From the NCBI GenBank assembly GCA_965655095.1, contig OZ296650.1, forward strand, positions 116,932,001 through 116,996,000: a stretch of 64,000 bases of DNA, given 5' to 3'. The stretch comes from Haplodiscus bocki. Taxonomy: Eukaryota. Positions 6,850 to 50,750 of this stretch are shown here, in pieces. The notes under the pieces are model-generated. The model did no database searches and had not been told where the DNA came from. It worked only from the letters and a program-made list of their open reading frames with translations. Within the stretch, counting starts at the first letter, position 1. Every line of letters begins with the position of its first letter. The position numbers and the translations under genes are program-made.

Positions 6850-7497
6850 ATCATTGACCATAGGGCGTTGTCTGCGCAACCAGTCTGGAGCAAAGTCATT
6901 TCCAAAACCGCCCAAGGAAGAGTTTCCATATTTGTGCGAAGACTGTGAGAAATCACGGAAGTCATTGACTGGCACGTTATCAGCTAATGGCTGCAAGAAC
7001 TGAGGACTGTGTGTCACGATATCTTTGAATTGCGGTTCTTGTGTGAAAGGCGCTTTCTTGAGAGAACCTGCTGCCTTCTGTTTACTCAACAAAAAATCTC
7101 TATCGTAAACTTTTCGGCCGTTGCTTGATGATTTCCCAATACTTGCCGCCGTTGGTGTACTGTCGTTATCAACCACAAATTTGGTTGCCGTGTTTCCATT
7201 CTCAGGAGTATCGTCAGGAGGTAAATTGTCAAAAATAATATTGCCCTTTGATGAAAATTTCTCACATTCATTGACACGCAGCTCTAGGTCCACCACACGA
7301 TTTGTAAGTAAGCGAATTTGATTGTCTTTTTCAGATAATTTATCAAGCAAATCAATCAAAATTCCCTTTAGATGAGGATTATCTAACGAATTCAATGCTT
7401 TTTGAGCGATAGTTGAGTAATGTTCATTCAAACTTGGTTGCACAGTGGGACAAACGACATTATGCGTGAATGTAGGTGCTTGTCCGGATATGAAGGA
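6850..7497 (-). CDS. EIF4G: Chimeric eIF4G exon copy 1: N-terminal piece + LINE-ORF1-like segment + eIF4E-binding region
   Basis: Open 648-nt phase-0 exon (tttttag| ... |gtatgt). Contains RKVYDRDFLL (YxxxxLphi; compare KKRYDREFLL) and DFAPDW. Function is uncertain because the upstream exon is interrupted by a MITE. Confidence 0.75.
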
Positions 7498-8790: not shown

Positions 8791-8796
8791 CACGTT

Positions 8797-13101: not shown

Positions 13102-13163
13102 CTAAAGACAAGTCTTATAAACTTCTATTCAACAATTTACTATTCTTCTCATTGAATTTTAAC

Positions 13164-13660
13164 CTGGAGGAAAATGCTGCGGGTAGAACGGGGCCCTCAT
13201 GTACGGCATTGTGTTGTTCTGTAGTGGTGGGACTGGAGCAATAGTCGAGTATGGTCCATTCAAACTTGGTTGCACAGTGGGACATACTACATTATGCGTG
13301 AAGGTAGGTTCTTGTTCGGGCTTTTCTGCTTCTGCATTACCTGGTTTCATCTCAGCACCATGTTGGCCTTCTTCAGCAGAGTGAAGCGTAGCTGAGGTAG
13401 AAGAGCTTTCGACTGCAGTTATTGTGCCCAAACCTAGTTTGCTGGGTTTGGCGATGGGAGCGTTGACTGTAGCATTGACATTTGCACTGTCCCCAGTGGG
13501 AGTACCCGTCGAATTTTTGGCGGTAGCCCCGCCCTTTTTCAATTCAGATGGATGGTCATTTTGCACATCGTAAGCACTCAGCAAATTAGCATCTCCTCGT
13601 TTTTCAAATTCTTTCTCCTTCTTCTTTCTTTTGTCTTTCCTCACACTTTTGACGCTGCCC
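13164..13660 (-). CDS. EIF4G: Chimeric eIF4G exon: pre-4E-motif region fused to an N-terminal exon
   Basis: KRKKKEKEFEKRGDANLLSAY resembles [22 protein letters not shown]. It then runs in frame into PTFTHNVVCPTVQPSLNG..., which is also the start of the 6850-7497 and 46302-46949 exons. Confidence 0.75.
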
Positions 13661-14454: not shown

Positions 14455-15809
14455 AATCCGTCATCATCAAATTCCTCTACTTTCATTCTCACAGGCTTCT
14501 TATTTTCCTTCTTCCACTATAGTTATTTTTTTACTGCCTCTCTTAATATTTTCAGGCGTCTTTCGATAAAAAACTCAAAAGAGATCTGAAAGTCTCTTCT
14601 TCAAGTTTTGTTCCGTCGTTTCGACTTTGAACTTGATAGTTCTTTCGACTCTAAGCTTCCAGTGCCTTGGACTATAAACCTCGACAGTCGTTTCTACTAT
14701 AAACTCGGCCGTCTTTCTACATTTTTGATCGCTGTCAGTCTCAGTAACTGAATCCCGCTTAGAACATGAGTCTATTCCAATCTAGTCCGAATACTGGACC
14801 CTGAGTTTAGAACACTCTAGCGATAGGGCAGCATTCACTTTTTACCAATTTGTTCCGCCTTATCGTTGTACAACTTCGCTCACATTTTTTAGTTTTCTGT
14901 CATCGTCGAGATCAACAACTATTCAACCGTTTCACTGCAACTTTCCACATTTCTGTTCTGAAACCAATCATTACCTCTCTGAAATTTCTATAACCATTCC
15001 CTCTGCATATTTTCATCACAGTTCATTCTGTATTCACTACAAAAACTTTCTTTAGCAATTTTAGTTGCTATTCTTTGATCATATATCTTCCTTTCCTCTG
15101 AAAAAATTGTTTCTATATAAATCTACTATTGCAGTGATCTTATCTTTTCTGTTGTAAAAACCCCCAATTGTTAGTAGTTTTCTGCTCTTTTGCTCCCTAT
15201 TTTTCCTTTCCCAAACTGTAGAACTTGGAGTCAGAACACGAAAGTTACGTTGCTTCGGGTTTTCCAATTTTTTATGTTGCTGATTATTAAGGTGACTGTT
15301 TAAAACGTAGTTGGGAATTAAATGTCAACTAGGAATGTTCACGGATAGTACTGAACTCCGTACTTCCTACCAAAGTTCCTTTGTCCTGTGAGACGTACAA
15401 GGAGAACTTTGCCATCAGTAACGATCAGACATTGTTCGCGAGCATTGATTGTTCATAATTTCGATATTTTTGTCTTCAAACTAAGTTCACTTTTTGATGC
15501 CATTCTCATTTTATAAAAAACTTCAAACTGATAGAATTATTTCAATTCTGCTAGCAATGTTTTGGTTGAAGGCAGTTTCAAAAACTCCTTTTTGTTTTGC
15601 CAGCAGCCTTTTGGTTGCACGCAAACTTTCAAATTTATCATGTTTTATTTCCTCATCGTTTTCTGCTTTTCCAGTCTTCGCTGTTGGATTTGTGTTTTTA
15701 TAAACAACACTGAAAGAGTCTGCATTTAATTTACTGCGAATATTCTTAATCACAATTATCATATTCACAGAAGAACTTATCCGTTTTCGATCAAACCCAA
15801 CTCCTGTGA

Positions 15810-18800: not shown

Positions 18801-21800
18801 TTTATTTGATTCATCATAAAACTCGTGATTGAATTTTTGCTTATGTACAATTCACTGTAATTTTCGACCCTCTAGAAACATTAACACTGATATCTGCTCC
18901 AAGATCATTATTCCAATGGATTTATTTTTACCATTTCAGTTTGTATTCATTCATTTTCTGAATAACTGCAAGAAGCTTATGAGTTTTAAGAACAACCTAG
19001 AGTTATTTTCTCTGCACCTGATGAACTTCGTTGAAAAACAACACCTCTTGAGGCTTCTAAAGTGGATTAAATCAGAAGCGTTCATGATCCATATCACTGG
19101 CTTTTGAGAGACGTTGTTCGAATAAATGCTTTTCAAGCTACCTTTCTGTCACAACTAACTGTTCTAGACACTGTAAGAAAACTCCAGAATAAAAATCAAT
19201 CTCTGTTTCTGAGAAACGTCCGCAGATATAAAAATCAACTCATCTGGAACACTTTGGATAAGACATGCTTTGAAAAAATTTCAGCTCAACTCAGTGAAGA
19301 AGAACTATTTCTCTTCTTGGTTAAATCTCAAAACTTTCATCCAAGAGTTCCTATTCTACTTCAAATCAACAATGAATTTTTTTCTGTCTTGAAAAATCGG
19401 GCTGATTTGATTACTGGGGAAAATCCTGCAAACGGACCAAAAGATCATACTATCGATGAGTTACGTTCAATTAAATCAATGGTCACTGAAGAAAAAATTG
19501 AAAAAAAAATAAATCAAGTTACTGGTTTCCAGCCTAAACAAAAAAACATCTCTGTTATTTCAAACCCAAAGATAAACAAAACTGAGACCGCTGAAAGCAT
19601 ACTTCATACTAAAGTTATTTTATCTCGAACCAGTTCTACTCTCATAACAAACAAAATGGTACCACTACCAGTTACTACAAAAACTATACGAAGCAATCCT
19701 GATTCACACATTGATTTAGCTATATTTAAAATGTCTGCTTTTAAAGATAATCCGTTTGATGCAAAGATTCGTCAATTCCAATTCCAGATCACTGCAGCAT
19801 TACTATTTTTGCATTTTATTAGATCTCAAAGGAGAACACTTCTCTTAAATCCATTCACTGATTATAAAGAGCATTTAGAGAGTAACTCAAATGTAACGAA
19901 CCAATCAAATTGATTTCATGATTATACAAAAATGCTAAATGCAAAAACTACCGCTGTTCCTGAATTGTCAAGACCTATCTTGGTTCCACTGACTAATGTT
20001 GTTACTTTCTCACTGAGTAGTACCAACAATAATACTTTTTGAACAAATCGATATTTAAAAAATATTGCAAATGCATCAGAAACGCTATATCAAACACCAT
20101 CTGCTCCCAAAAGAGGTCCTTGTGCAGGTTTGCCTTCTTTATTCTCCATTGCTACTGTAAATCCAATTAGTTACTCTCCTATGATCACACAAATCTATAC
20201 TGTACCTTTTGTTGCAGTGAACAAATCTGTAACAAACATTGATGGAAATGACCAACAAAAAACACCTGAAGAGTAAAAAATTCGAATTGACCCACACCTG
20301 ATTTTTTTTATGGGAGAAGAACACCACTATCTTGTACTTTATAAATATTGCCATAAATCAAAACTGGCATTCATACACTGATCTTTATCTGGAATTGATT
20401 TAAGCTGCTTTCCACGACTCTTTGAAAGTTACAAAAATGATTGGTCTGCTTTTGTACCTGCCTTCAATAGTACAATTGTCTTCGCAAAAACCTGCAAACT
20501 ACGTACCAAGAACATTTTTTACACCATCATGTCAGCTCGACACACAGCAAAAAATTCAAACTCAAATAATCCTTTTGACGATGAAAAATTTGACAATAGC
20601 AACCACTCAGGAAAAATAACTGAATCTATTCAGGAAAAAAACTCTGTAGAACCAGATACAAGTCCAACTGAAAGTATACATCAAAACCCACTGCAATTCG
20701 ATGATTCTTCCTACTCTGCTATTTTTACTGAACAAGCACAAAATACATCTTGGTATATGCAACAACAATTATTTGAAGATTTCTCATTAGAAAAGTTTCA
20801 AGCTGAAAATGAAAATTTAAAACTGCAACATCGAAATAGAATCATAGCTGCAAACAAATTGTTAAGAAAAGAAGAATTGGAACCCACTCAATTTCTGCAA
20901 CAATAGTTCAGGATGATATTATTACTCTGAAAGAAACTCAATTGCTTCCTTCAACATCAAAAAGTACCATCACAGCAAGTTGCTAGATCTGAATTTTCAC
21001 CACCTACTCCATTCATCTTTCATGTTGTCGGAAAAAGACAAACGAGCATTTTTCTAAGGATGCTAGCAGCTTCACTGAAACTTTTATATGAGATTCAAAA
21101 ACTTCTTTGCTAATTGAAAAACAGTGTAAATATTATTAATTAGTTCCTCTGATTTTTATTTCATTCATTATAAAACTTGTGATTGGATTTTTGCTTTTGT
21201 TCAAATCACTGTAACTTTTGACCCTCTAGAAACTTTAACACTGATATCTTTTCGAACATCAGTAATCCAATAGATTTTTATTTAACATTTCAGTTTGTAT
21301 TCGTACATTTTCTGGATATCTGCCGGAAGCTTATGAGTTTCTGGAACAATCTAGAGTTGTTTTCAGTGCATCTGATGAACTTCCTAAAAAACAACACCTC
21401 TTGAGTCTTCTAATATGGCTTGAATCAGAAGCGTTCGTATTTCCTTATCACTGGCTTTTGAAAGACCTTGCTCAAGTAATTGCTTTTCAAGCTACCTTTC
21501 TCTCACAACTAACTGTTCTAGACACTGTAAGAATACTCCAAAAAAAATCAATCTCTGTTTCTGAGAAAGGTTCGTACATATAAATATCAACTCACCTGGA
21601 ACACTTTGGATAAGACATGTTTTGAAAAATTTTCAGATCACCTCACTGAAGAAGAACTCTTTCTCTTCTTGGTTAAATCTCAAAACGATCATCCAAGAGT
21701 TCCTATTCTACTTCAAATCAACAATGAATTTTTTTCTGTCTTGAAAAATCGGGCTGATTTGATTACTGGGGAAAATCCTGCAAACGGACCAAAAGATCAT

Positions 21801-24800
21801 ACTATCGATGAGTTACGTTCAATTAAATCAATGGTCACTGAAGAAAAAATTGAAAAAAAATAAATCAAGTTACTGGTTTCCAGCCTAAACAAAAAAACAT
21901 CTCTGTTATTTCAAACCCAAAGATAAACAAAACTGAGACCGCTGAAAGCATACTTCATACTAAAGTTATTTTATCTCGAACCAGTTCTACTCTCATAACA
22001 AACAAAATGGTACCACTACCAGTTACTACAAAAACTATACGAAGCAATCCTGATTCACACATTGATTTAGCTATATTTAAAATGTCTGCTTTTAAAGATA
22101 ATCCGTTTGATGCAAAGATTCGTCAATTCCAATTCCAGATCACTGCAGCATTACTATTTTTGCATTTTATTAGATCTCAAAGGAGAACACTTCTCTTAAA
22201 TCCATTCACTGATTATAAAGAGCATTTAGAGAGTAACTCAAATGTAACGAACCAATCAAATTGATTTCATGAATATACAAAAATGCTAAATGCAAAAACT
22301 ACCGCTGTTCCTGAATTGTCAAGACCTATCTTGGTTCCACTGACTAATGTTGTTACTTTCTCACTGAGTAGTACCAACAATAATACTTTTTGAACAAATC
22401 GATATTTAAAAAATATTGCAAATGCATCAGAAACGCTATATCAAACACCATCTGCTCCCAAAAGAGGTCCTTGTGCAGGTTTGCCTTCTTTATTCTCCAT
22501 TGCTACTGTAAATCCAATTAGTTACTCTCCTATGATCACACAAATCTATACTGTACCTTTTGTTGCAGTGAACAAATCTGTAACAAACATTGATGGAAAT
22601 GACCAACAAAAAACACCTGAAGAGTAAAAAATTCGAATTGACCCACACCTGATTTTTTTATGGGAGAAGAACACCACTATCTTGTACTTTATAAATATTG
22701 CCATAAATCAAAACTGGCATTCATACACTGATCTTTATCTGGAATTGATTTAAGCTGCTTTCCACGACTCTTTGAAAGTTACAAAAGTGATTGGTCTGCT
22801 TTTGTACCTGCCTTCAATAGTACAATTGTCTTCGCAAAAACCTGCAAACTACGTACCAAGAACATTTTTTACACCATCATGTCAGCTCGACACACAGCAA
22901 AAAATTCAAACTCAAATAATCCTTTTGACGATGAAAAATTTGACAATAGCAACCACTCAGGAAAAATAACTGAATCTATTCAGGAAAAAAACTCTGTAGA
23001 ACCAGATACAAGTCCAACTGAAAGTATACATCAAAACCCACTGCAATTCGATGATTCTTCCTACTCTGCTATTTTTACTGAACAAGCACAAAATACATCT
23101 TGGTATATGCAACAACAATTATTTGAAGATTTCTCATTAGAAAAGTTTCAAGCTGAAAATGAAAATTTAAAACTGCAACATCGAAATAGAATCATAGCTG
23201 CAAACAAATTGTTAAGAAAAGAAGAATTGGAACCCACTCAATTTCTGCAACAATAGTTCAGGATGATATTATTACTCTGAAAGAAACTCAATTGCTTCCT
23301 TCAACATCAAAAAGTACCATCACAGCAAGTTGCTAGATCTGAATTTTCACCACCTACTCCATTCATCTTTCATGTTGTCGGAAAAAGACAAACGAGCATT
23401 TTTCTAAGGATGCTAGCAGCTTCACTGAAACTTTTATATGAGATTCAAAAACTTCTTTGCTAATTGAAAAACAGTGTAAATATTATTAATTAGTTCCTCT
23501 GATTTTTATTTCATTCATTATAAAACTTGTGATTGGATTTTTGCTTTTGTTCAAATCACTGTAACTTTTGACCCTCTAGAAACTTTAACACTGATATCTT
23601 TTCGAACATCAGTAATCCAATAGATTTTTATTTAACATTTCAGTTTGTATTCGTACATTTTCTGGATATCTGCCGGAAGCTTATGAGTTTCTGGAACAAT
23701 CTAGAGTTGTTTTCAGTGCATCTGATGAACTTCCTAAAAAACAACACCTCTTGAGTCTTCTAATATGGCTTGAATCAGAAGCGTTCGTATTTCCTTATCA
23801 CTGGCTTTTGAAAGACCTTGCTCAAGTAATTGCTTTTCAAGCTACCTTTCTCTCACAACTAACTGTTCTAGACACTGTAAGAATACTCCAAAAAAAATCA
23901 ATCTCTGTTTCTGAGAAAGGTTCGTACATATAAATATCAACTCACCTGGAACACTTTGGATAAGACATGTTTTGAAAAATTTTCAGATCACCTCACTGAA
24001 GAAGAACTCTTTCTCTTCTTGGTTAAATCTCAAAACGATCATCCAAGAGTTCCTATTCTACTTCAAATCAACAATGAATTTTTTTCTGTCTTGAAAAATC
24101 GGGCTGATTTGATTACTGGGGAAAATCCTGCAAACGGACCAAAAGATCATACTATCGATGAGTTACGTTCAATTAAATCAATGGTCACTGAAGAAAAAAT
24201 TGAAAAAAAATAAATCAAGTTACTGGTTTCCAGCCTAAACAAAAAAACATCTCTGTTATTTCAAACCCAAAGATAAACAAAACTGAGACCGCTGAAAGCA
24301 TACTTCATACTAAAGTTATTTTATCTCGAACCAGTTCTACTCTCATAACAAACAAAATGGTACCACTACCAGTTACTACAAAAACTATACGAAGCAATCC
24401 TGATTCACACATTGATTTAGCTATATTTAAAATGTCTGCTTTTAAAGATAATCCGTTTGATGCAAAGATTCGTCAATTCCAATTCCAGATCACTGCAGCA
24501 TTACTATTTTTGCATTTTATTAGATCTCAAAGGAGAACACTTCTCTTAAATCCATTCACTGATTATAAAGAGCATTTAGAGAGTAACTCAAATGTAACGA
24601 ACCAATCAAATTGATTTCATGATTATACAAAAATGCTAAATGCAAAAACTACCGCTGTTCCTGAATTGTCAAGACCTATCTTGGTTCCACTGACTAATGT
24701 TGTTACTTTCTCACTGAGTAGTACCAACAATAATACTTTTTGAACAAATCGATATTTAAAAAATATTGCAAATGCATCAGAAACGCTATATCAAACACCA

Positions 24801-26880
24801 TCTGCTCCCAAAAGAGGTCCTTGTGCAGGTTTGCCTTCTTTATTCTCCATTGCTACTGTAAATCCAATTAGTTACTCTCCTATGATCACACAAATCTATA
24901 CTGTACCTTTTGTTGCAGTGAACAAATCTGTAACAAACATTGATGGAAATGACCAACAAAAAACACCTGAAGAGTAAAAAATTCGAATTGACCCACACCT
25001 GATTTTTTTTATGGGAGAAGAACACCACTATCTTGTACTTTATAAATATTGCCATAAATCAAAACTGGCATTCATACACTGATCTTTATCTGGAATTGAT
25101 TTAAGCTGCTTTCCACGACTCTTTGAAAGTTACAAAAATGATTGGTCTGCTTTTGTACCTGCCTTCAATAGTACAATTGTCTTCGCAAAAACCTGCAAAC
25201 TACGTACCAAGAACATTTTTTACACCATCATGTCAGCTCGACACACAGCAAAAAATTCAAACTCAAATAATCCTTTTGACGATGAAAAATTTGACAATAG
25301 CAACCACTCAGGAAAAATAACTGAATCTATTCAGGAAAAAAACTCTGTAGAACCAGATACAAGTCCAACTGAAAGTATACATCAAAACCCACTGCAATTC
25401 GATGATTCTTCCTACTCTGCTATTTTTACTGAACAAGCACAAAATACATCTTGGTATATGCAACAACAATTATTTGAAGATTTCTCATTAGAAAAGTTTC
25501 AAGCTGAAAATGAAAATTTAAAACTGCAACATCGAAATAGAATCATAGCTGCAAACAAATTGTTAAGAAAAGAAGAATTGGAACCCACTCAATTTCTGCA
25601 ACAATAGTTCAGGATGATATTATTACTCTGAAAGAAACTCAATTGCTTCCTTCAACATCAAAAAGTACCATCACAGCAAGTTGCTAGATCTGAATTTTCA
25701 CCACCTACTCCATTCATCTTTCATGTTGTCGGAAAAAGACAAACGAGCATTTTTCTAAGGATGCTAGCAGCTTCACTGAAACTTTTATATGAGATTCAAA
25801 AACTTCTTTGCTAATTGAAAAACAGTGTAAATATTATTAATTAGTTCCTCTGATTTTTATTTCATTCATTATAAAACTTGTGATTGGATTTTTGCTTTTG
25901 TTCAAATCACTGTAACTTTTGACCCTCTAGAAACATTAACACTGATATCTTTTCGAACATCAGTAATCCAATAGTTTTTTATTTAACATTTCAGTTTGTA
26001 TTCGTACATTTTCTGGATATCTGCCGGAAGCTTATGAGTTTCTGGAACAATCTAGAGTTGTTTTCAGTGCATCTGATGAACTTCTTAAAAAACAACACCT
26101 CTTGAGTCTTCTAATATGGCTTGAATCAGAAGCGTTCGTATTTCCTTATCACTGGCTTTTGAAAGACCTTGCTCAAGTAATTGCTTTTCAAGCTACCTTT
26201 CTCTCACAACTAACTGTTCTAGACACTGTAAGAATACTCCAAAAAAAATCAATCTCTGTTTCTGAGAAAGGTTCGTACATATAAATATCAACTCACCTGG
26301 AACACTTTGGATAAGACATGTTTTGAAAAATTTTCAGATCACCTCACTGAAGAAGAACTCTTTCTCTTCTTGGTTAAATCTCAAAATGTTCATCCAAGAG
26401 TTCCTAATCTACTTCAAATCAACATTGAATTTATTTCTGCCTTGAAAAATCTGGCTGATTTGATTACTGTGGCAAATCTTGCAAACGGACCAAATGATCA
26501 CAATAACGATGAATTACGTTCAATTAAATCAATGGTCACTGAAGAAAAAATTGAAAAAAAATAAATCAAGTTACTGGTTTCCAGCCTAAACACAAAAACA
26601 TCATTGTTATTTCAAAGCCAAAGATAAACAAAACTGAGACCGCTGAAAGCATACTTCATACTAAAGTTATTTTATCTCGAACCAGTTCTACTCTCGTAAC
26701 AAACAAAATGGTACCACTATCAGTTACTACAAAAACTATAGGAAGCAATCATGATTCAAACATTGTTTTAGCTACATTTGAAATGTCTGCATTTAAAAAT
26801 AATCCGTTTGATGCAACTATTCGTCAAATCCAACTCCAGATCACTAAAACAATTGTCTTCGCAAATTACTGCATACTACG
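15810..26880 (+). repeat. Tandem array of five ~2.35-kb units covering the gag N-terminal extension and the start of capsid
   Basis: The marker ATGTCAGCT(a/g/c)GACACACAGC occurs at 15828, 18177, 20529, 22879 and 25230. Unit ends encode FESYKNDWSAFVPAF (gag CA-like). The last unit has a ~0.7-kb deletion near 26845. Confidence 0.97.
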
Positions 26881-40700: not shown

Positions 40701-42653
40701 GATTCCACATCCTCATTGACATTTTTCACAGAAGAACAAACCTGCGAGAAAATATTTGGCTCAGTGTTTTATCAACCTGCCTCTGACAAACATGTTGATT
40801 CCAACAACTAACCCTTCTACATGTATTCCTAAGGGATATCTCTGATGAATAATGAACAAATACTTTGAAAATTTTACAAAATTTAAACAATATTCATCAA
40901 TAAACGTTCATCTGTCTTTTGGAAAAAATTTTATTTCTTTCTGAAACAAAATCACCCCCTCACTGGCTTTTTTTGGCTCCGTGGCTTTTTAATCCCACTG
41001 GATTTCTGTCACTGGATTTCTGGCTAATTTGATTTCTGGCTCACTGGAATTTATCGTTCGATCAATGGATTTTTGGATTTTCGCTTTCTGACTTTCAATC
41101 TCTGTTTCTGCAATTCTGTATTGTTCAGCATTATTCTGGATTCGATCTCACACTCTCCTGTTTTGTTTTTCTGGCTCTGTCAACCCCCGAACAAAACAAT
41201 ATCATTTTTCTTTGGAATTAATTTCACTCTACTTGTTGATGTTTTTCTGAAAGCTGCAATGAATGATTTTGTACCCAACTTTTCTTGTCATTGCTAAGTT
41301 AAAGAAACCCAATTGCAATCTCACCTCAATTTGGGTAAACTCTCACCGCTCACACTCCTTCGCACCCTCTGGGTCATTCAAATTACTGCTGCGTTGCAAG
41401 CACAAACTCCATGCGCAAATTAGTGTGAAATTGTTCCAAACAATATGATTTTGGACTCTGTTTACCAAACTTATAAACTCGTAAAAAGTCTTTTTGTTAA
41501 AAAAACAAAACTCATAAATTCTTCGTGTAAATTTGATACAAGTTTTTTGTATTCGTTTCATAAACCCAACCCTTACAAATTTATAAAGTGCTACCCTTGT
41601 AATCTCAAGTACTTCGCAAATCCCCCCATATTTATTTTCCTCAAATTATCATAAATTTTAGTCTTATTCATGATATGACATAAAAAATAATGCAATAATG
41701 TTTTGTCTGTCCAAATCAAACAAAAATCACACTGGAAACTTCTCTAAAGTACCATCTGAAATTCGACAGAATGAAAAATTTTGATCTAACATTCTGAAGG
41801 TGATTCGATTTCGAAGAAAAATTTCTGTAACCCAGTTTCAGAGATAAAACTGAGAAACTGAAATTCCAGCAAGTTTCAACACTTTCTAGTCACAACTAGT
41901 CACATTTTTTTCACTCTTCTTTCATACCTGCATGACTTTTCTTCCAACTTTTTCCGGCAACGAAAGCACAGTGAACATAGAAATAAGTTTCGTGACTATG
42001 GACTTCGAAGAAATCAAAGAAATTTTACTTTGAATGAACTAAAAGTCTAAAGAACAGCTCATTCTGTGGAGAACTCGAGAACTTGGACTAATTTGCTGAT
42101 TTTGCCCCCTTCTCAACTCATAAGTGTGAACTGACTATCAAGATAACTTGTTGATAAACCCAACTGATCTTTGGTGACCACCTCAGTATGTTACACTCCG
42201 TTATTAATGTTAACTGACTTGTAACTAATTCATAGTACGTCATCAAAGTGAACTGTCATGTTTTTCATTCAAGTCAACTTATTCAAGTGAACAACAGAAC
42301 AAAGTGAGAGTCTCCTGTGTCGAAGCTCATCAAATTAAAGTTAAACTCTGAAACTTTCGAAAGAATTTGAAATGCCCAATAAACTGAATTCAATCAACTG
42401 AGATAGCTAATTTATGATTATTCGCGCCTAATTAAGAGTCGAACCCTCAACATTTACTTCGAAAAAGTTGTCTAACATACTGAGAACTCCTGTAAAATGG
42501 AAAAATTATAAAAAATGAACCTTTCTAGAACTGCCTGACTTTATTGACTTTAATAAAAGGCTGATGATACGCAAAAGTGAAAACCCCCTGAAACGTGCTA
42601 AACTTTTATGAGCAAGCTCTGAACTTAAAATTTTCAACTAAAACCCTGTCGGT

Positions 42654-42937
42654 TGTAATGCTTATACATTTAGAGAAGATATTCCTGAAGTATCATCGGA
42701 CAAAAAGTAACTTGTTATATATTCCTTACTTTTGACTTTTGTAGATGTTTATGATATAGATATCAACTTAGAGTTGAAGTAACATTGAAGTAAAGACTAG
42801 TCGTTTTTCTCTCGGGAAGTATTGAGAAATTTTAGGATATATTAGCTTACCCAAGTAACATCAAGTCAAAGCAAGGCCTACTTGTAGTCTTAACTTCAGT
42901 AACAAAACGCAACAGATGCTCTTAAAAAGTTGATGCA
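42654..42937 (+). repeat. 3' LTR (284 bp)
   Basis: TGTAATG...GATGCA; collinear with the 5' LTR, with roughly one site in five different by eye. Confidence 0.9.
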
Positions 42938-44323
42938 GCTTGAACAATCAAGTTATTAATCTAATAAAGCATGCGGCTTACACAGGTTTAATCTGAAAGT
43001 TAGTCACAAATTGAGTCGACTTAGCGCGTTTGTGTTTCCGTCTTAGCACGTTAAACAAGATATTTGAAACACGATCTTTGCAACATAAAATGCGGCGAGT
43101 ACTTTCACACACTTTGAGGTCCAATACTTGCCAGCCGACGCCATAATCAAGTATATATTACATTTTTCATCAGATAGGAAAATTGAAATCATCACAATTT
43201 TGAATGACATTAATTGAAACTAATTATCAAAAGGTAACTTTGATACCTTTCAATTTGAGCCATAACAGACGCGTTTTCTGAGAATTAGGGGCTCAGAAAG
43301 ACGCATGAGGTTCAAAAATTCCACTATTCAATCAAAGATAAAACAAGCCCAATACCCAACATATGAGGTGATTCTCGGACATCCATTCCAGAGGATGGAG
43401 GATACCAACCAAACTATAAATCTTGTCACATGCACAGATGAGGACGCTAAGGAATTTTTTGCTTGCCGCCACATTTTGCAAAAAATTCATTTTGAATGAA
43501 TTTCAAATAAATAACGAAGTGATTTCAGAATGCTTGATTCAAATATTTGGCGAAACGTTGAATGATTTTCAAATATAATCCATTAAATTGAAATTTGTCT
43601 TGAAAAAATGTGCGGAAAAGAAAATAGAGTTGCCTTTTAATAACCTGAAATATTGAGAGCATGGCACTCAAATGAATGATGACAGCAAGACTTTAATTAA
43701 TTTTAGCAAAAAAAAATATGTATCGGAAATATATATGCATGTGAACTTGGACCAATTTTTGCTTCTGTAACTACAGTGACAGGCAGACACCGCGAAAATC
43801 TGCTGCGAGCAGAAAACAGCAGACTTTACCATTCACAGCAGATTGAGCAGAATGGAAAAATCTCTCTTGCTTATGTTCTGATTTTCACAATAACCAAAAA
43901 AGTCTCGTCTGCCCATACACTGAAAGAAAATGTGACTGAAAATTTTGACGTACACAAAAATACTACAAGAAAAATGAGCTCAAAAATATTCAAAACGGTT
44001 CATGAATTGATAATTTTTGGTTGGTGAGCATTTCTTGCGTTGCAATCAATAAACTCAACAATTTTGGAGGAAATTTCCAATAAGCAGATTTAATTTTGGG
44101 CAGCAGCAGAATTTCGGTTTGAGAGCAGCATATTTTCGAGATGTATGGTGACAGGCTATTTTCAAAAAATAGCGTCAAGTTCAACGTCCATTGAGCTACT
44201 CTTGAGTGACCCGGTCGCAATCTACTGACTAATTAGAGCCTTTTGTTGTATGATGAGAATTCTTTGTATAAAATGGTACGTGCAAGGCAAAAAAGCAAAA
44301 TTGTAGCGCGTAAGTTTCCTCAC

Positions 44324-44891
44324 CTTGATTATCTTGCGCAGATTTATCATCAGGGGGTCGGTTGGCAAATTCCATTTTTCTGTCACAGGCTGGCTCTTTG
44401 CTTTTTCCATGCTGTTTGCGATCACTTGCAGCACTGACGTCCGTGTCTAGGTCGATGCTGGGCTTTGCTGCCAGAATTGGCTCCACCCCTTTGGCCGATT
44501 TCTCCGGCACAAAATCCTTCACCTTGTCATAATCTACTTTAGATAAATCGCCGGTGTTATGTGAACCAAAAGAGGAAGAATTTACATCGGTCAAGTTTTG
44601 GGAGTTCTGGACGGGGGCATCTATATGACCGTTAACAACAGGTGTCGTCGTCGATTCAGCGGTTTTATTCTCGTCTAGTTTGGTGTTTATGAAGTCCTGT
44701 TTTCTCTTCGATTTCCAGGAATTTCCTGATTCTGTCAGTCGCATGTCCTGGTTTTGCATATTCGTCGTGAACTGCATTCTAGTTTGCGTGTTGTGGGATC
44801 CGCGATCACTTCTGAAGCTGTTGCTTCCTCCGCCTTGCAAATTGTTGCCGGAGCCCATTCCACTTTTTCCTCTCGAATTTGTTGCGCCGCC
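44324..44891 (-). CDS. EIF4G: Chimeric eIF4G exon: pre-MIF4G region fused in frame to an acidic/low-complexity segment
   Basis: ctttttag|GGC ... G|gtgagg, open. DMRLTESGNSWKSKRK resembles DIKLNKAEKAWKPSSKR, but the ILNKLT start of MIF4G that should follow is absent. Confidence 0.7.
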
Positions 44892-46301
44892 CTAAAAAGT
44901 TGAGAATCCAAAATTGTGCAAAAGAAGATAGGTTAAAAAGGCGTAATTCGAAAATAATGCCAAAACATAGCAGAATTGCATTGAAACTTTTTCTTGAGCC
45001 ACCTTTTTTCCAGAAAGACTACTAGACACATTCTATGGCAAGTTTGGCGCATAAATTTCGCTGTGCAAATTTGCTAATGGTTCAATCGGCAAATTTCATA
45101 TTAAAAAATCTTGAATGTTGAATGATTTTGCTGCCATACAAAATATGGGCAGAAAATACCAGCTTTGCAAACCATCTCAAATATTTGTCAGTTACACTTT
45201 TCCAGAGGTCTTGTGCTTTTAGAATGTTAAAACCGCCCAGCTAACGAAAACAGTACGTTTGTACATGATGCATCAGAAACCTTCATAAGGTTTTGAATTT
45301 TAATGTAGCCAATTTGTATCTCTGTATTCAACATTATCGAACTGACCTAATTTATAACTTTTCATTGCTTCTTATAGATGTGAATCAGTGCTAAATAATG
45401 TGAATCAGTACTAAATCTAAAAGCGATTCCAAAAAGTAACTTATGAACGTTTTTACCGTACCTAGGCATCATTAAAAATGAAATACGTTTTCTCAGTAGT
45501 ACAAGATGCACAAAATCAAGACAAATCTGGCTATGAATTTCCACCGATTCAGGCAATTATTCATGAAAGGAATGCCAACTTAGTGGTTCAAACTAGCGAT
45601 GTCAGATCTCTGATATCAATACCTCAAAACGTGAAAAACAGATACTGAAATCACTGAATGTTTGCGTTTTGAACAATCGGATGAACTATAGTGAGGAGCT
45701 GCTTGTATACCTAGCGTCTTTATGTTCATAAATTATGCTTTTAGAGTGTTGTACGGTTAATTTCGACATAGATGCACTTTGAAGAAAATTCCACCCATGT
45801 GGTGCGGACTAAAACAGATTATTTTGTTTATTTTTCAAAAATCAGGAAGTGTAAAATTTCATGTTTGAAGGCATTTTTTTATCGAATCATCTTCATAAAA
45901 CTACTTTCCATTTTTAAAGTAAGTAAAACCGAGATCAAAAGCTATTTTTTTTAAGAACTTTGGACAAAAACTGATTAAAGAATGCTAATCTGTTGAGATC
46001 ATTGCTGCCATTTTTGGCAAATATTATGCTCCTTGGCAAAATGATATAAATTCAAAAAAGGTTCCTTTAAATTTCCCCATCTTCCGTAATTTGAGAAAGG
46101 ATGCCAGGTAGGCATTAAGCGCTAAGAGTTGGACGCTTAAGACAATTGGAATTGTGCAATTTTGGCCAAATTTGACTCATAATTGGGAAAAAGCGGAATA
46201 TGAAATTCATCGCTTCACTTTACCGCTCAGCCAGTCCGACTTGCCAAGAAAAAAAGTAAATTCTATAGGCCTTAAATCAAGCTTCATGCCTAAAAACATA
46301 C

Positions 46302-46949
46302 ATCATTGACCATAGGGCGTTGTCTGCGCAACCAGTCTGGAGCAAAGTCATTTCCAAAACCGCCCAAGGAAGAGTTTCCATATTTGTGCGAAGACTGTGA
46401 GAAATCACGGAAGTCATTGACTGGCACGTTATCAGCTAATGGCTGCAAGAACTGAGGACTGTGTGTCACGATATCTTTGAATTGCGATTCTTGTGTGAAA
46501 GGCGCTTTCTTGAGAGAACCTGCTGCCTTCTGTTTACTCAACAAAAAATCTCTATCGTAAACTTTTCGGCCGTTGCTTGATGATTTCCCAATACTTGCCG
46601 CCGTTGGTGTACTGTCGTTATCAACCACAAATTTGGTTGCCGTGTTTCCATTCTCAGGAGTATCGTCAGGAGGTAAATTGTCAAAAATAATATTGCCCTT
46701 TGATGAAAATTTCTCACATTCATTGACACGCAGCTCTAGGTCCACCACACGATTTGTAAGTAAGCGAATTTGATTGTCTTTTTCAGATAATTTATCAAGC
46801 AAATCAATCAAAATTCCCTTTAGATGAGGATTATCTAACGAATTCAATGCTTTTTGAGCGATAGTTGAGCAATGTCCATTCAAACTTGGTTGTACAGTGG
46901 GACAAACGACATTATGCGTGAATGTAGGTGCTTGTCCGGGCATGAAGGA
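46302..46949 (-). CDS. EIF4G: Chimeric eIF4G exon copy 2 with eIF4E-binding motif YDRDFLL and LINE-ORF1-like insert
   Basis: Open 648-nt phase-0 exon; splices in frame to the 47121-47162 and 44324-44891 exons. Confidence 0.8.
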
Positions 46950-47120
46950 CTAAAAAAATCACAATTCATTTCAAACAAAATTCCGTGTTTCTGAAACTAA
47001 GTGTGTACATTTCATTCAAATGTTATTTTCAAAAAAACTTGGTAGCAAACAATCTAAAACGAATAGGGAAGCAAATAGATTCCAAAACTTTCACCCAATA
47101 AAAAAAGCCTAAGCACTCAC

Positions 47121-47162
47121 CATGTCGCGTGTTTGCGGATACATAGGCGCAAAAGTTGGATT
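47121..47162 (-). CDS. EIF4G: eIF4G N-terminal micro-exon, copy 2
   Basis: 42 nt, canonical AG/GT, phase 0. Confidence 0.7.
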
Positions 47163-47226
47163 CTGAAACACGAACAATGTTACCAATAGTTCAAACAGCG
47201 TACACGATAGAATTGGGAAAACTTAC

Positions 47227-47376
47227 ACCGGCAGGAAACAAATGTCCATTATTTGCTTGGGCACTATTGTTTACGTATGACATCGGGTTCGTGTTTGTAT
47301 AGGGAGTATTAAAGAAGTGTGATCCAATTGGTGATGAGTTTATAGAGTGAACGTGATTGAACGTGGAATTTATTTT
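47227..47376 (-). CDS. EIF4G: eIF4G N-terminal exon (NSSPIGSHFFNTPY...GHLFPAG), copy 2
   Basis: Open frame with a |gtaagt donor; the 5' boundary is uncertain. Confidence 0.6.
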
Positions 47377-47482
47377 CTAGATCCAAGGCTCATATTCTAA
47401 ACAAAAACGTCTTTAGCACTGAATTGAGCTGCTTCTTTAATAATTTATTGCGGAACTTATCTTCAGTTGATATTGGGCCGCC

Positions 47483-47612
47483 TTAGGTCCACCACACGAT
47501 TTGTAAGTGAACAAATTTGATTGTCGTTTTCAGATAATTTATCAAGCAAATGCGAAGCAAGTAAAATTCCCTTTAGATTAGGATTATCTTACGATCTTCT
47601 GATGCTTTTTGA
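47483..47612 (-). mobile_element. Free, decayed copy of the LINE-ORF1-like segment found inside the chimeric exon
   Basis: taggtccaccacacgatttgtaagt...cagataatttatcaagcaaat...aaaattccctttagat matches 46737-46857, with indels. Confidence 0.85.
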
Positions 47613-48015
47613 AAATCAAATTTGGCCAATTTGGTAAACGGTTACTCTAAACGATCAGCAGTTACGTAATTGTGAAGCAAATGGTGGATTCGCAAATGAC
47701 ATAAGACCGGCAAACAGAATGTTCTGATTGGCTATTTACATATATACTATCCAATAACTTTTTCACAGTATAGTCAGCGGATGTTTTTACGAACAACAAA
47801 TTGTTACTAACGGGGGCAGGTAAAAATCTCTGAGTGTAGCAAGTTCACAAATAACTGCCACCAAGTGGTCGGAACCGTAGATGTCGGGGTGCCGAAGGCG
47901 TTGGTTTCAATGCTGTTGGTATTGCAAATCCCTTTTCGGCTATTTTTATCATAATCGCACTCAATATGTATAATTGTTATTGAAAAATTTATGTTTAGTG
48001 AGACTACTTTCAAAC

Positions 48016-48826
48016 TTATATTTGGCGCAGTCTTATCTCATTTGGTACGTAATCAAGCAAACAATGCATTTGATTTTCAGCCACGCATATTGTGTATGTC
48101 GTGAGATAAGATTTAGAAGCATGTGCTAGCTAATATGGTGAAATTTAATATTTCTGAGACATATGTTGCTTATTTTCTCAATGACGTACTGAGCCAACGT
48201 ATTTTATCGAACCAACTGAAAAACTATCTAAAGGAGACGACGCGTTAAGCAACAACCGATTAAACAGACACGCTGAAAAGATTTAACTTTGGACAGAAAT
48301 AAATCCAACTGTCCGAATGAGTTGAGAGCTAATCAAATTCGAATATTCATTCGTTCACATTTTTTTCAGTATAATGCCCCAATTTATACGTTTACCTGCG
48401 CAACGAATGCTGTCCTAAGCAAAGTACAGTACTTTTTTAAAGAGGTTCGTACTTGCATCTGTGCAAAAAGTTTCGGACAAAAAGAGTTTCAGCCGAAAAA
48501 GAATGCAAATTTCATACACATTGCAGAAGTTTCTGAGAACTTCATCCAGTTTACAATGATGATGAAAATTCTAGATTTATTATGCAGTAGTTTGAAGACT
48601 TTGTTTACGCATGTATTAAAATAGCAGATTGGTTTTGCATCACAAACACAACTTTTCATGTTTTCAATTCCAAACTTCGATACATTTTGTTTACTCACAA
48701 GATGCCCTTCATCTACTGATTGAAGTCAAAAGTTGGCAGATCTTCCAGTGCAATTTCTTGAGAAACAATAACCCCCACATGTATTCAGATTAAGCAAAAA
48801 TTCTTCAAGGAATGCTGGTTCTTGGG
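48016..48826. repeat. ~0.8-kb dispersed repeat, copy 2
   Basis: Homologous to 8797-9585 and 50025-50750. Confidence 0.85.
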
Positions 48827-48960
48827 CAGTGTAAACATTAAGGAGCTGGCACTAATGATTGAATAGGAATAGTATAGCGCGTGTTTTTATTGCAACTTGT
48901 TCAAGAAAAGAAGTGTAACATCATCTCTGAGAAATAAATAATAAACAATTAATGACTAAC

Positions 48961-49292
48961 AGCTCTGAGATCAATGATATCTTGAAGCATGAATCGGATT
49001 CTGCATGAAGTCTGTTTGCTTAAGACCATATTCTGGATGCGTTTGAAGTATTGACCCATCAAGTTTCGACAAGTCTCATGGTCCATTTTTTGCCCAACTG
49101 TAGTCAACAGATTGCACATGCATTCCAAAGAATCTTCGTCTTTCGAGTTTTTCAAAAGCAACTCGATGGACGAATGCATGATTTGTTCAGTCAAAAAGTC
49201 CACTTTGAACAACTCGCCAATGAATCTTTTATTTTCAAGAGGTTGTTTCCATCTCAAGACTATCTAATTCTTCTTCTTTTTCCCCTCCTTTC
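48961..49292 (-). pseudogene. EIF4G: eIF4G MIF4G domain C-terminal exon (frameshifted near 49240)
   Basis: RFIGELFK..EDSLECMCNLLTTVGQKMD..RIRFMLQDIIDLR closely matches MIF4G. Donor |gttagt at 48960. The upstream EKEEELDSLEME is in another frame. Confidence 0.92.
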
Positions 49293-49481
49293 CTTGAAAT
49301 ATATTAACCTTTAACTATCTTGGAAAAACTCCTACTGTGCAGTTTAGACAACTTAATTTCGTTCATGAAACGAAACAAAAACATTGCTTTCAAGCGAAAT
49401 CGGGCACGTTTGTGAACCATCGGAGCATTTAAGTGAGTATTTAAATGAACTAAACTTAAGAGTCAGGAATAGTTCACTTAC

Positions 49482-49667
49482 GGTGCTTTTATTGATGACA
49501 GCTTTTTTCTCTTCGTTTTCTTTTTCATCGTCCTTCTCTCGCTGAAACTCCTGCTGACATCTGTTGAGCAACTGGCGTCGAAAAAGAGCAATTACTGGAT
49601 CTGTAGGAGGGTTTTTGTACGAGCGCTTGTCCACTTTGGAACGCTTAGCTTGTTGTTCTTGAAGCCG
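49482..49667 (-). CDS. EIF4G: eIF4G MIF4G middle exon
   Basis: FRRQLLNRCQQEFQREKDD resembles FRKLLLNRCQKEFEKDKDD. 186 nt, ttatag| ... |gtaagt. Confidence 0.9.
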
Positions 49668-50024: not shown

Positions 50025-50750
50025 TTATATTTGGCGCAGTCTTATCTCATTTGGTACGTAATCAAGCAAACAATGCAATTGATTTTCAGCTACGCATATT
50101 GTCTAGGTCGTGAGATAAGATTTAGAAGCACGTGCTAGCTAAAATAGTGAAATTTAATATTTCTGAGACATACGTTGCTTGTTTTCTCAATGACGTACTA
50201 TTTTTCGAACCAACTGAAAAACTACCTAAAGGAGACGACGCGTTAAACAACAACCGATTAAACAGACACGCTGAAAAGATTTAACTTTGGACAGAAAAAA
50301 AATCCAACTGTCCGAATGAGTTGAGAGCTAATCAAATTCGAACATTCATTCGTTCCCATTTTTTTTTCAGCATAATGCCCCAATTTATACGTTTCCCTGC
50401 GCAACGAATACTGTCCTAAGCGAAGTACAGTACTTTTTAGGAGGTTCGTAATTGTATCTGTGCAAAAAGTTTCGGACAAAAAGAGTTTCAGCCGAAAAAG
50501 AATAAAAATCTCAAACATTGCAAAAGTTTCTTAGAATTTCAACTAGTTTACAGTGATGATGAAACTTCTAGGTATTTTATACAGTAGCTTGAAGACTTTG
50601 TGTCTGCATGTATTAAAACAGGATATTGCATCACAACCAAAACGCCTTATGTTTTCAATTCCAAACTTCTATACATTTTAATTATTCACAAGATGCCCCT
50701 CAGCTACCGATTGCAGTCAAAAGTTGGCAGCTCCTTGAGTGCAACTCTTT
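50025..50750. repeat. ~0.8-kb dispersed repeat, copy 3
   Basis: Homologous to copies 1 and 2. Confidence 0.85.

What the first reader, a model, noticed from the sequence alone, without database searches (positions are those of the whole stretch)
46670..46857. LINE-ORF1-like coiled coil exonised in frame inside eIF4G, with a decayed donor-like copy 0.6 kb away
Seen: QKALNSLDNPHLKGILIDLLDKLSEKDNQIRLLTNRVVDLELRVNECEKFSSKGNIIFDNLP sits between N-terminal eIF4G sequence (...STIA, which continues PVPPLQ at ~13240) and the 4E-motif region. The same segment is at ~7219-7405, and an indel-riddled copy is at 47483-47612. Established: LExRVxxxExxSxxxNxxxxxLP is the coiled-coil/RRM junction of L1/CR1 ORF1-type (Transposase_22-like) proteins, which trimerise. 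Inference: a templated insertion patched a large deletion and may give the chimera an oligomerisation module.
Basis: partly seen in the sequence, partly recalled or inferred. Interest (0 to 1): 0.7.

Follow-up and report, generated by a model that had tools for sequence, protein, structure and literature searches.

The report
LINE ORF1 coiled coil fused to eIF4G copies
A 62-codon helix-forming piece of a jumping gene's first protein sits in frame inside rearranged spare copies of the translation factor eIF4G, just ahead of the motif that binds eIF4E. It is a real gene-transposon fusion, but nothing yet shows that it is expressed or useful.

Summary
On the minus strand, 46671-46856 and its twin 7219-7404 encode 62 residues in frame between an eIF4G N-terminal fragment and the eIF4E-binding motif YDRDFLL.

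The segment comes from a transposon. It is 74% identical to codons 7-68 of ORF1 of a young 4-kb LINE with an endonuclease/RT ORF2 and an (AATTC)n tail. At least 22 copies of that LINE, about 99% identical, were recovered. The modelled ORF1 fold matches human L1 ORF1p (coiled coil, RRM, CTD), but Pfam Transposase_22 is not hit. The coil carries two RhxxhE trimerisation motifs.

- The host is not the canonical eIF4G, which lies next to the window and lacks the coil. The host is a set of scrambled partial duplicates without MIF4G downstream.
- Three fusion architectures share one identical transposon breakpoint, which points to a single capture that included the 5'UTR and ATG.
- The window's form arose later, when 0.63 kb of eIF4G 5' genomic DNA was inserted into the coil with about 125 bp duplicated.
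- The "decayed donor" at 47488-47681 is therefore the displaced 5' half of the old first exon, not a donor.

Function is open. Splice sites and frame are intact, selection signals are weak, and no RNA data were available.

The parts
46302..46949 (-). Composite exon (type 3, '47k copy'), 216 codons in phase 0 at both ends. AG acceptor after a T-run at 46950-46951 and GTATGT donor at 46296-46301.
46857..46949 (-). A' segment: the first 31 codons of an eIF4G N-terminal exon (SFMPGQAPTFTHNVV...STIA). In the parental form it continues PVPPLQ.
46671..46856 (-). LINE ORF1 codons 7-68: coiled coil with RhxxhE motifs RVVDLE and RVNECE, plus the first RRM strand. This is the finding itself.
46302..46670 (-). 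C segment: eIF4G sequence from DDTPENG to the exon end, carrying the eIF4E-binding motif YDRDFLL at 46539-46559.
47488..47681 (-). Decayed LINE 5' fragment: about 54 nt of 5'UTR plus ORF1 codons 1-46. ATG is now TTG (47627-47629), with a 2-nt and a 6-nt insertion. It is the displaced 5' half of the formerly transposon-initiated first exon.
46857..47487 (-). The ~0.63-kb eIF4G 5' genomic piece inserted into the coil. It holds the exon ...NTPYTN...FPAG (47227-47310, GTAAGT donor), the exon NPTFAPMYPQTRDM (47121-47162, AG acceptor and GTGAGT donor), two introns and A'.
6850..7497 (-). Twin composite exon ('7k copy'). The coil is at 7219-7404 and YDRDFLL at 7087-7107. Upstream exons are at 7772-7855 and 7666-7707. 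There is no decayed LINE fragment upstream, because the duplicate ends at 7882.
13236..13321 (-). Parental-type copy of A' inside ORF 13159-13668, where ...STIA is followed by PVPPLQ with no coil.

Best explanation
The 62 codons are codons 7-68 of the first ORF of a CR1/L2-lineage LINE, whose ORF1 protein has the L1-type layout of coiled coil, RRM and CTD. SHOWN: the transposon origin, the junctions and the colinearity between loci. INFERRED HISTORY: a 5' fragment of such a LINE (5'UTR, ATG and 68 codons) became fused once, at the DNA level, to a duplicate of the eIF4G exon that carries the eIF4E-binding motif. This gave transposon-initiated paralogs: type 1 is coil plus the preceding eIF4G segment plus the 4E motif; type 2 is coil plus the 4E motif. 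In the lineage leading to the window copies (type 3), a 0.63-kb genomic piece of the eIF4G 5' region was then inserted into the coil with about 125 bp of it duplicated. That piece held two small exons, their introns and the start of the next exon. The downstream coil copy stayed in frame as an internal part of a composite exon. The upstream copy lost its ATG and frame and is the 'decayed copy'. Segmental duplication then spread the block: two copies in the window, one at 117.08 Mb on the same chromosome, and one on contig 9. INFERRED FUNCTION: if the exon is translated, the only ordered element besides the short 4E-motif helix is a six-heptad helix with two trimer-type RhxxhE motifs, about 38 residues upstream of YDRDFLL. 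The product would then be a self-associating, probably trimeric, eIF4E-binding protein. Because the window copies have no MIF4G downstream, it could not act as an eIF4G scaffold. I rate origin and history at about 0.9, and expression with a selected function at about 0.3. The more likely state is a young, weakly constrained by-product of an unstable eIF4G duplicate cluster.
For: Origin: the segment matches ORF1 of the LINE at L061:2195-6241 at 74% aa and 75% nt identity. That element has ORF1 of 266 aa, ORF2 with Exo_endo_phos and RVT_1 domains, and an (AATTC)n tail; three copies compared over their length are 99.2-99.3% identical and the coil is near-identical in 22 copies. The ORF1 family has 534 clusters in the global library, and the coil is continuous with the RRM in all aligned members. 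Fold: the AF2 model has pLDDT 87, and the top 10 Foldseek hits are all human L1 ORF1p trimer chains (E about 1e-7, TM 0.64-0.67 on the target). Type II ORF1 is documented in CR1 and L2 clades (PMC4120745). The coil is not native to eIF4G: the canonical gene (C3:116.842-116.894 Mb) has the two eIF4G segments contiguous in one exon (L064), and so do P0005 and P0007, which are not encoded in this genome (88% and 76% best identity). Single capture: the transposon 3' breakpoint (...ACCTCCT) is identical in all three architectures, although the eIF4G partner differs between type 1 and types 2/3. Types 1 and 2 keep the transposon ATG and at least 21 nt of 5'UTR. Type 3 history: locus L032 is colinear with type 2 locus L036 in the order upstream flank, decayed LINE 5' part, insert, coil from codon 7, 4E-motif segment, intron. 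The A'/coil junction has 2-nt microhomology. Coil competence: 10 of 12 a/d positions are hydrophobic, and the two RhxxhE motifs sit in g-a-d-e register and are conserved in all types and in the LINE (motif meaning from PMC5940361). In the AF2 model of the exon, only helix 41-81 is confident (pLDDT 82-88). Exon signals are intact in both window copies. Weak hints of constraint: no frameshifts in the exons against 5-10 gap openings in the flanking introns; the coil is the least diverged part (0-2.7% against 6-10.7%); and the decayed copy carries 2-4 times more private changes.
Against: No RNA run holds the stretch, and the runs found behave as DNA, so transcription and splicing are unproven. Among the fusion copies, dN/dS for the coil is 0.4-1.6 on very few changes, and for the 4E-motif segment 0.25-0.73. 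Exon substitution divergence is about the same as intron divergence in the L032-L034 pair. The copy at 117.08 Mb has two stop codons, and type 2 has H in place of the essential Y of the 4E motif. The low coil divergence includes synonymous sites, which fits gene conversion as well as selection. The tree of the 186-nt coil cannot separate the fusion copies from an old LINE copy (L007), so single capture rests on the shared breakpoint. How a 5' LINE fragment without its 3' part arose is unknown. Trimerisation was not modelled because no multimer tool was available.
Confidence: 0.8

Rival explanations
1. Dead relic: the composite exon belongs to scrambled, non-transcribed eIF4G pseudogene fragments. 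The frame is open only because the duplicates are young and because gene conversion homogenises them.
For: The window is a mosaic of eIF4G pieces in permuted order. No MIF4G, MA3 or W2 lies downstream of either window copy. The next ORF (44232-44858) is itself a mosaic of two non-adjacent canonical exons. One sister copy has two stop codons. Coil dN/dS is about 1 within type 3, and exon substitution rate is about equal to the intron rate. The mosaic divergence between the two window copies (7% upstream against 0-1.4% downstream) points to conversion or recombination.
Against: Five of six fusion exons are open across 3-10% divergence, without a single frameshift. All splice signals are retained in both window copies. 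dN/dS for the 4E-motif segment is 0.25-0.5 in most pairs. The unexonised duplicate of the same coil decayed faster.
Confidence: 0.55
2. Native exon, reverse direction: the coil is an original, alternatively used eIF4G exon, and the LINE picked it up from eIF4G.
For: None beyond the shared sequence itself.
Against: The coil is the conserved N-terminus of an ORF1 family with 534 clusters, and it runs straight into the RRM. The fusion copies carry LINE 5'UTR and the LINE start codon. The canonical eIF4G exon and the exons of two proteins not encoded in this genome lack it. More diverged LINE families with the same coil, at 40-50% identity, are scattered over all chromosomes.
Confidence: 0.02
3. 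Single-step templated patch: a break that deleted the region between ...STIA and the 4E motif was repaired by copying 186 nt from a nearby LINE fragment, the decayed copy.
For: There is short microhomology at the A'/coil junction (2 nt), and a LINE fragment lies 0.6 kb away.
Against: The coil/4E-segment junction is identical in type 2, which has no A' and starts at the LINE ATG, and the same LINE breakpoint is used in type 1. The decayed copy stops at codon 46, so it cannot have templated codons 47-68. Colinearity with type 2, including the flank upstream of the decayed copy, fits an insertion into a pre-existing coil.
Confidence: 0.05
4. Assembly artefact: the junctions come from collapsing or mis-joining repeats.
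For: The region is rich in 83-97% duplicates.
Against: The same junctions occur at four type 3 loci with 0-3% coil divergence (up to ~9% across the locus). Short-read unitigs from two samples bridge both junctions.
Confidence: 0.02

Closest known systems
L1-type (type II) ORF1p of non-LTR retrotransposons (human L1ORF1p, PDB 2yko/2ykp/2ykq; Pfam Transposase_22)
   Same: The donor ORF1 has the same order of coiled coil, RRM and CTD, and Foldseek ranks L1ORF1p chains 1-10. Two RhxxhE motifs lie just before the RRM, as in mammalian L1. It is the first ORF of an endonuclease/RT LINE.
   Different: There is no detectable sequence match to PF02994 or to the PDB sequences. The coil is short, about 6 heptads. 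The element is CR1/L2-like, with a microsatellite tail. The window holds only the coil and one beta strand, not an ORF1p.
DUF3669 of KRAB zinc-finger proteins (ZNF746/PARIS), an L1 ORF1p coiled-coil fragment co-opted as a trimerisation domain (bioRxiv 10.1101/2025.03.01.640934)
   Same: A fragment of a LINE ORF1p coiled coil with RhxxhE motifs is fused in frame to a host protein, with trimerisation as the expected gain.
   Different: DUF3669 is old, conserved and shown to trimerise. Here the fusion is young, multi-copy and weakly constrained, it sits in a translation-factor paralog of an invertebrate-type genome, and it is untested.
Canonical eIF4G
   Same: It shares the N-terminal exons, the YxxxxL-hydrophobic eIF4E-binding motif and the flanking sequence, at 86-90% identity to the canonical exon of this genome.
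   Different: The window copies lack about 400 residues between ...STIA and the 4E-motif segment, carry the LINE coil instead, and have no MIF4G, MA3 or W2 downstream.
Transposon-initiated chimeric genes (a LINE 5'UTR promoter and start codon driving a host exon)
   Same: Types 1 and 2 begin with LINE 5'UTR and the ORF1 ATG and read straight into eIF4G sequence.
   Different: In the window (type 3) the LINE start was displaced and has decayed, so the coil is now internal.

Membership tests
L1-type (type II) ORF1p / Transposase_22 - asked of the donor LINE ORF1 | It is the first ORF of a non-LTR retrotransposon, upstream of an endonuclease/RT ORF2. | tested here: met
   In L061, ORF1 is at 2271-3071 and ORF2 carries Exo_endo_phos_2 (E=1.7e-10) and RVT_1 (E=9e-39). 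Element ends are defined by 99% identical copies.
L1-type (type II) ORF1p / Transposase_22 - asked of the donor LINE ORF1 | The fold is an N-terminal coiled coil followed by one RRM and a CTD. | tested here: met
   The AF2 model has pLDDT 87. Foldseek ranks 1-10 are human L1ORF1p trimer chains over about 200 columns, with probability 1.00.
L1-type (type II) ORF1p / Transposase_22 - asked of the donor LINE ORF1 | Sequence match to Pfam PF02994. | tested here: not met
   No hit at E<=10 for ORF1 or the segment, and none of 41 family members hit it at E<=1 among the listed families. The profile search against PDB gave only coiled-coil noise.
L1-type (type II) ORF1p / Transposase_22 - asked of the donor LINE ORF1 | RhxxhE trimerisation motifs in the heptads before the RRM. 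| tested here: met
   RVVDLE and RVNECE are in g-a-d-e register and are conserved in the LINE and in all three fusion types.
L1-type (type II) ORF1p / Transposase_22 - asked of the donor LINE ORF1 | Homotrimer formation. | not testable with these tools
   No multimer prediction or experiment was available.
L1-type ORF1p - asked of the window segment itself | Complete RRM and CTD. | tested here: not met
   The segment stops after the first RRM strand (codon 68). The rest of the exon is eIF4G sequence and is predicted to be disordered.
eIF4G | eIF4E-binding motif YxxxxL-hydrophobic. | tested here: met
   YDRDFLL is at 46539-46559 and 7087-7107. Type 2 has HDRDFLL.
eIF4G | A MIF4G (HEAT-1) domain downstream in the same gene. 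| tested here: not met
   The only MIF4G exons in the window (48949-49634) lie upstream of the 47k copy, and none follow either copy. The next ORF is a mosaic without MIF4G. Types 1 and 2 elsewhere do have MIF4G exons 2-4 kb downstream.
eIF4G | Homology of the flanking exons to the canonical gene of the same genome. | tested here: met
   Identity to C3:116855911-116856285 is 86% at the protein level and about 91% at the DNA level; the N-terminal fragment A' was matched to the window's own parental-type copy at 13236-13321 (87-88% DNA).
Domesticated (co-opted) transposon domain | Transposon origin, in frame with host exons, with working splice signals. | tested here: met
Domesticated (co-opted) transposon domain | Transcription and translation of the fusion. 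| not testable with these tools
   No RNA run holds the stretch, and the runs laid down behave as DNA.
Domesticated (co-opted) transposon domain | Purifying selection or conservation across species. | tested here: inconclusive
   dN/dS is 0.4-1.6 for the coil and 0.25-0.73 for the 4E-motif segment. There are no frameshifts, but exon substitution rate is about equal to the intron rate. No relatives' genomes were reachable.

The most novel reading that the evidence does not exclude
The fusion protein is made, and its coil co-assembles with ORF1p of the currently active LINE family. The two coils are 74% identical and share both RhxxhE motifs, and distinct L1 coils are known to form heterotrimers (PMC10588031). 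The host would then have a transposon-derived decoy with one of two effects. It could poison LINE ribonucleoprotein assembly, acting as a dominant-negative restriction factor. Or it could tether eIF4E to, or strip it from, LINE RNPs through the adjacent 4E-binding motif. The repeated duplication and reshuffling of these eIF4G copies would then reflect an arms race rather than junk.
Probability: 0.07. Interest if true: 0.8.

Novelty: new member of a known kind. Interest (0 to 1): 0.45.

Why it matters
Capture of a LINE ORF1p coiled coil by a host protein has very few documented cases; DUF3669 in KRAB zinc-finger proteins is the clearest. This locus shows one in the making, with three successive architectures and the discarded half of the original exon still readable. 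That gives an unusually complete record of how a transposon's promoter, start codon and coil can be grafted onto a translation-factor paralog and then moved inside it. If any copy is expressed, a self-associating protein that binds eIF4E but lacks the eIF4A/eIF3-binding core would be a new type of cap-binding regulator. It could also interact with an active transposon. If none is expressed, the locus is still a clear example of DNA-level exon shuffling in an unstable duplicate cluster.

Tried and rejected
- Pfam on the segment, the 217-aa ORF, the LINE ORF1 and 41 relatives gave no Transposase_22, only weak coiled-coil noise.
- A profile search of PDB sequences gave only trimeric coiled coils at E>0.005 (HA2, gp41, one L1 coil at E=0.21), which is not evidence.
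- The word-based protein search found only proteins encoded in this genome or in close relatives, none with a name.
- The ESM Atlas gave unnamed arthropod clusters, 'Endonuclease-reverse transcriptase', and some with Baculo_FP_2nd. This is a lead only.
- The RNA-run search found no RNA holder. The four runs found are contigs that cover introns evenly and show no splice joints, so they say nothing about expression.
- A tree of the 186-nt coil could not resolve whether the fusion copies exclude the old LINE copy L007.
- A relative-rate test of the decayed against the exonised copy was only borderline (chi-square 1.1-4.5).
I worked with the 3-kb loci that the genome search returns.
All searches were exon by exon, by reference.
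- I considered and rejected retroposition or template switching of an eIF4G mRNA, because the inserted eIF4G piece keeps its introns.

Full report
**1. What is in the sequence**

The relevant gene is on the minus strand.
- ORF 46290-46943 (217 aa) contains an eIF4G N-terminal fragment ending ...STIA, then 62 residues at 46671-46856, then PDDTPENG... with the eIF4E-binding motif YDRDFLL at 46539-46559.
- A twin ORF at 6838-7443 has the identical 62 residues at 7219-7404. It lies inside a 1.77-kb duplicate, 6114-7882 against 45565-47337, at 97.4% identity.
- A partial, indel-bearing copy lies at 47484-47612 (86.8%).
- The parental form, in which ...STIA runs on as PVPPLQ, is at 13236-13321 inside ORF 13159-13668.
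- The stretch 46302-46949 is bounded by a T-run plus AG acceptor and a GTATGT donor. It is 216 codons long and in phase 0 at both ends. Two small upstream exons with canonical sites precede it, at 47227-47310 and 47121-47162. The 7k copy has the same set.
- Short-read unitigs from public runs bridge both junctions.

**2. The segment comes from a LINE ORF1**

The window is C3:116932001-116996000 of a 1.5-Gb genome.
- In that genome the 62 aa match more than 20 places at 73-74% identity (E about 5e-21), each inside a 266-268-aa open frame. They also match many more diverged families at 40-50% identity on all chromosomes.
- Three longer copies define a 4.05-kb element, L061:2195-6241, with 99.2-99.3% identity between copies.
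- The element has a 76-nt 5'UTR and ORF1 at 2271-3071. Its ORF2 carries Exo_endo_phos and RVT_1 domains, and it ends in an (AATTC)n tail. This is a young CR1/L2-type LINE.
- The homology covers ORF1 codons 7-68 and stops exactly after ...NLP.

**3. Is the ORF1 'L1/Transposase_22-like'?**

- By sequence it is not. Pfam gives nothing for the segment, the ORF1 or 40 diverse relatives, and a profile search of PDB sequences gives only coiled-coil noise.
- By fold it is. An AF2 model built on 41 family members has mean pLDDT 87. It shows helix 16-58, a beta-alpha-beta-beta-alpha RRM-like unit and a C-terminal domain.
- Foldseek ranks 1-10 are all chains of the human L1 ORF1p trimer (E 1e-7 to 3e-6, TM up to 0.67 on the target, about 200 aligned columns).
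- Type II ORF1 (coiled coil, RRM, CTD) is documented in CR1 and L2 clades (PMC4120745).
- The family has 534 clusters at 50% identity in the global library.

**4. The coil itself**

- Over residues 11-52 of the segment, 10 of 12 a/d positions are hydrophobic.
- RVVDLE and RVNECE are two consecutive RhxxhE motifs with R at g, hydrophobic residues at a and d, and E at e. They are conserved in the LINE and in every fusion copy.
- In L1ORF1p such motifs stabilise the parallel trimer (PMC5940361).
- In an AF2 model of the composite exon, the only confident element is helix 41-81 (pLDDT 82-88). A short helix covers the 4E motif, and the rest is predicted to be disordered.
- No multimer tool was available, so trimerisation is an inference.

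**5. The host is not the working eIF4G**

- A complete-looking gene lies just beside the window on the same strand. Its N-terminal exons are at C3:116893061-116893937. Its exon at 116855911-116856663 holds the segment ending ...EETCWEDKTLA directly followed by DDTPENG and the 4E motif. MIF4G is at 116851360-116853307 and W2 at 116842260-116842460.
- No coil hit falls in that interval.
- Two proteins from the public collection, P0005 and P0007, have the same uninterrupted exon. Their best matches in this genome are only 88% and 76% identical, so they come from other assemblies or relatives.
- The window itself is a scramble of eIF4G pieces: a permuted junction inside ORF 13159-13668, MIF4G exons at 48949-49634 upstream of the 47k copy, and ORF 44232-44858, which is a mosaic of two non-adjacent canonical exons.
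- Neither window copy has MIF4G, MA3 or W2 downstream.

**6. Three architectures, one capture**

| Type | Locus | Architecture |
|---|---|---|
| 1 | C3:126.355 Mb (L035, P0004) | LINE 5'UTR, LINE ATG and coil, then the eIF4G segment from ...NLLSAYD, then the 4E motif. MIF4G exons lie 2-4 kb downstream. |
| 2 | C3:116.391 Mb (L036, P0003) | LINE ATG and coil, then directly DDTPEN... MIF4G lies downstream, but the 4E motif reads HDRDFLL. |
| 3 | Two window copies, C3:117.078 Mb (two stop codons), C9:70.918 Mb | N-terminal eIF4G fragment, then coil from codon 7, then DDTPEN... |

In the DNA alignment the LINE part ends at the same base (...ACCTCCT) in all three types, although the eIF4G partner differs between type 1 and types 2/3. 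That is best explained by a single capture followed by internal changes. A tree of the 186-nt coil groups the fusion copies, the decayed copies and one old LINE copy (L007) against the young LINE (support 100/100), but it cannot resolve more.

**7. Origin of the window's form and of the 'decayed donor'**

Locus L032 (the 47k copy) is colinear with type 2 locus L036 in this order:
1. a flank upstream of the LINE part (79.6% identity);
2. the decayed LINE part, 47488-47681, holding about 54 nt of 5'UTR and codons 1-46;
3. a 0.63-kb block absent from type 2;
4. the coil from codon 7, the 4E-motif segment and the intron (87.3% over 931 nt).

The extra block is eIF4G 5' genomic DNA with its introns, so the event was at the DNA level and was not retroposition. 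About 125 bp of the coil (codons 7-46) is present on both sides of the block. The junction between the eIF4G fragment and the coil has 2-nt microhomology.

The decayed copy is therefore the displaced 5' half of a formerly LINE-initiated first exon. It is not a donor, and it ends at codon 46, so it could not have templated codons 47-68. It has ATG changed to TTG, a 2-nt and a 6-nt insertion, and 2-4 times more private substitutions than the exonised copy (chi-square 1.1-4.5, borderline). The contig-9 copy shares these lesions, so they predate that duplication.

**8. Is it used?**

No RNA run holds the stretch. The four runs found are contig sets that cover introns and show no splice joints.

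| Measure | Result |
|---|---|
| Coil dN/dS among fusion copies | 0.4-1.6, on few changes |
| Coil dN/dS against the LINE | 0.11-0.21, which reflects the LINE lineage |
| 4E-motif segment dN/dS | 0.25-0.73 |
| Frameshifts in the exon (type 3 pairs) | none |
| Gap openings in flanking introns | 5-10 per 420-725 nt |
| Coil divergence | 0-2.7% |
| Intron divergence | 6-10.7% |

Against selection, overall exon substitution divergence is about the same as intron divergence in the L032-L034 pair. The low coil divergence includes synonymous sites. The two window copies are mosaic (7% upstream against 0-1.4% downstream), which points to gene conversion.

My reading is weak constraint at best. I put the probability that at least one type 3 copy makes a selected protein at about 0.3.

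**9. Comparison with known cases and verdict**

- The closest precedent is DUF3669 of KRAB zinc-finger proteins, a co-opted L1 ORF1p coil that makes the host protein a trimer (bioRxiv 10.1101/2025.03.01.640934).
- Distinct L1 coils can form heterotrimers (PMC10588031). This leaves open a decoy reading, in which the fusion would interact with ORF1p of the active LINE.
- This is a new example of a known kind of event, with unusually well-preserved intermediates, and its function is unproven.

**10. Limits**

- No relatives' genomes, RNA data or multimer prediction were available.
All work was exon by exon.

Noticed in passing
window 15809-26845: A tandem array of a ~2.35-kb unit, about 4.7 copies at 87-96% identity. 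Each later unit carries an identical 125-aa ORF on the plus strand (20529-20906, 22879-23256, 25230-25607), and longer ORFs sit at 16761-17228 and 19104-19913. The nature of the array is unknown.
   Followed up: no
window 8795-9585, 48021-48826, 50030-50749: Three copies of a ~0.75-kb repeat at 83-89% identity, flanking the eIF4G pieces. It may be a repeat that mediates the rearrangements.
   Followed up: no
window 13159-13668 (-): This ORF joins the eIF4G segment that normally precedes the 4E motif (...AEKPEQE) head-to-tail to the N-terminal exon (PTFTHNVV...). The order is permuted relative to the canonical gene. A similar permuted junction (...KTLAD joined to NTPYTN...) is at C9:70942658-70943128 (L070).
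   Followed up: partly
window 44232-44858 (-): This 209-aa ORF is a mosaic. Residues 1-76 match the canonical exon just before MIF4G (C3:116853290-116853523). Residues 48-193 match an exon that lies upstream of the 4E-motif exon in the canonical gene (C3:116858485-116859354).
   Followed up: partly
window 48949-49634 (-): Two MIF4G-domain exon fragments (Pfam E=2e-22 and 5e-4) lie upstream of the 47k composite exon, which is the wrong order for eIF4G. The same arrangement recurs at C3:117079144-117079446.
   Followed up: partly
L061:2195-6241 (G000:C4:103158194-103162240) and at least 21 other loci: This is a very young, probably active 4.05-kb CR1/L2-type LINE. Copies are 99.2-99.3% identical, ORF1 is intact in most, and the tail is (AATTC)n. 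L062 lacks 577 bp (L061:4634-5209) relative to L061 and L063.
   Followed up: partly
L036 (G000:C3:116390688-116391245, -): The type 2 fusion paralog starts at the LINE ATG and has MIF4G exons downstream. Its 4E motif reads HDRDFLL, so the essential tyrosine is lost.
   Followed up: no
protein P0009 (LINE ORF1): ESM Atlas neighbours of the ORF1 include arthropod clusters in which some members carry Baculo_FP_2nd or Baculo_FP. This hints at a link between baculovirus FP proteins and this ORF1 family. It is a lead only.
   Followed up: no
window 14138-14360 and 42653-42875: A 223-bp repeat pair at 85% identity in direct orientation, of unknown nature.
   Followed up: no
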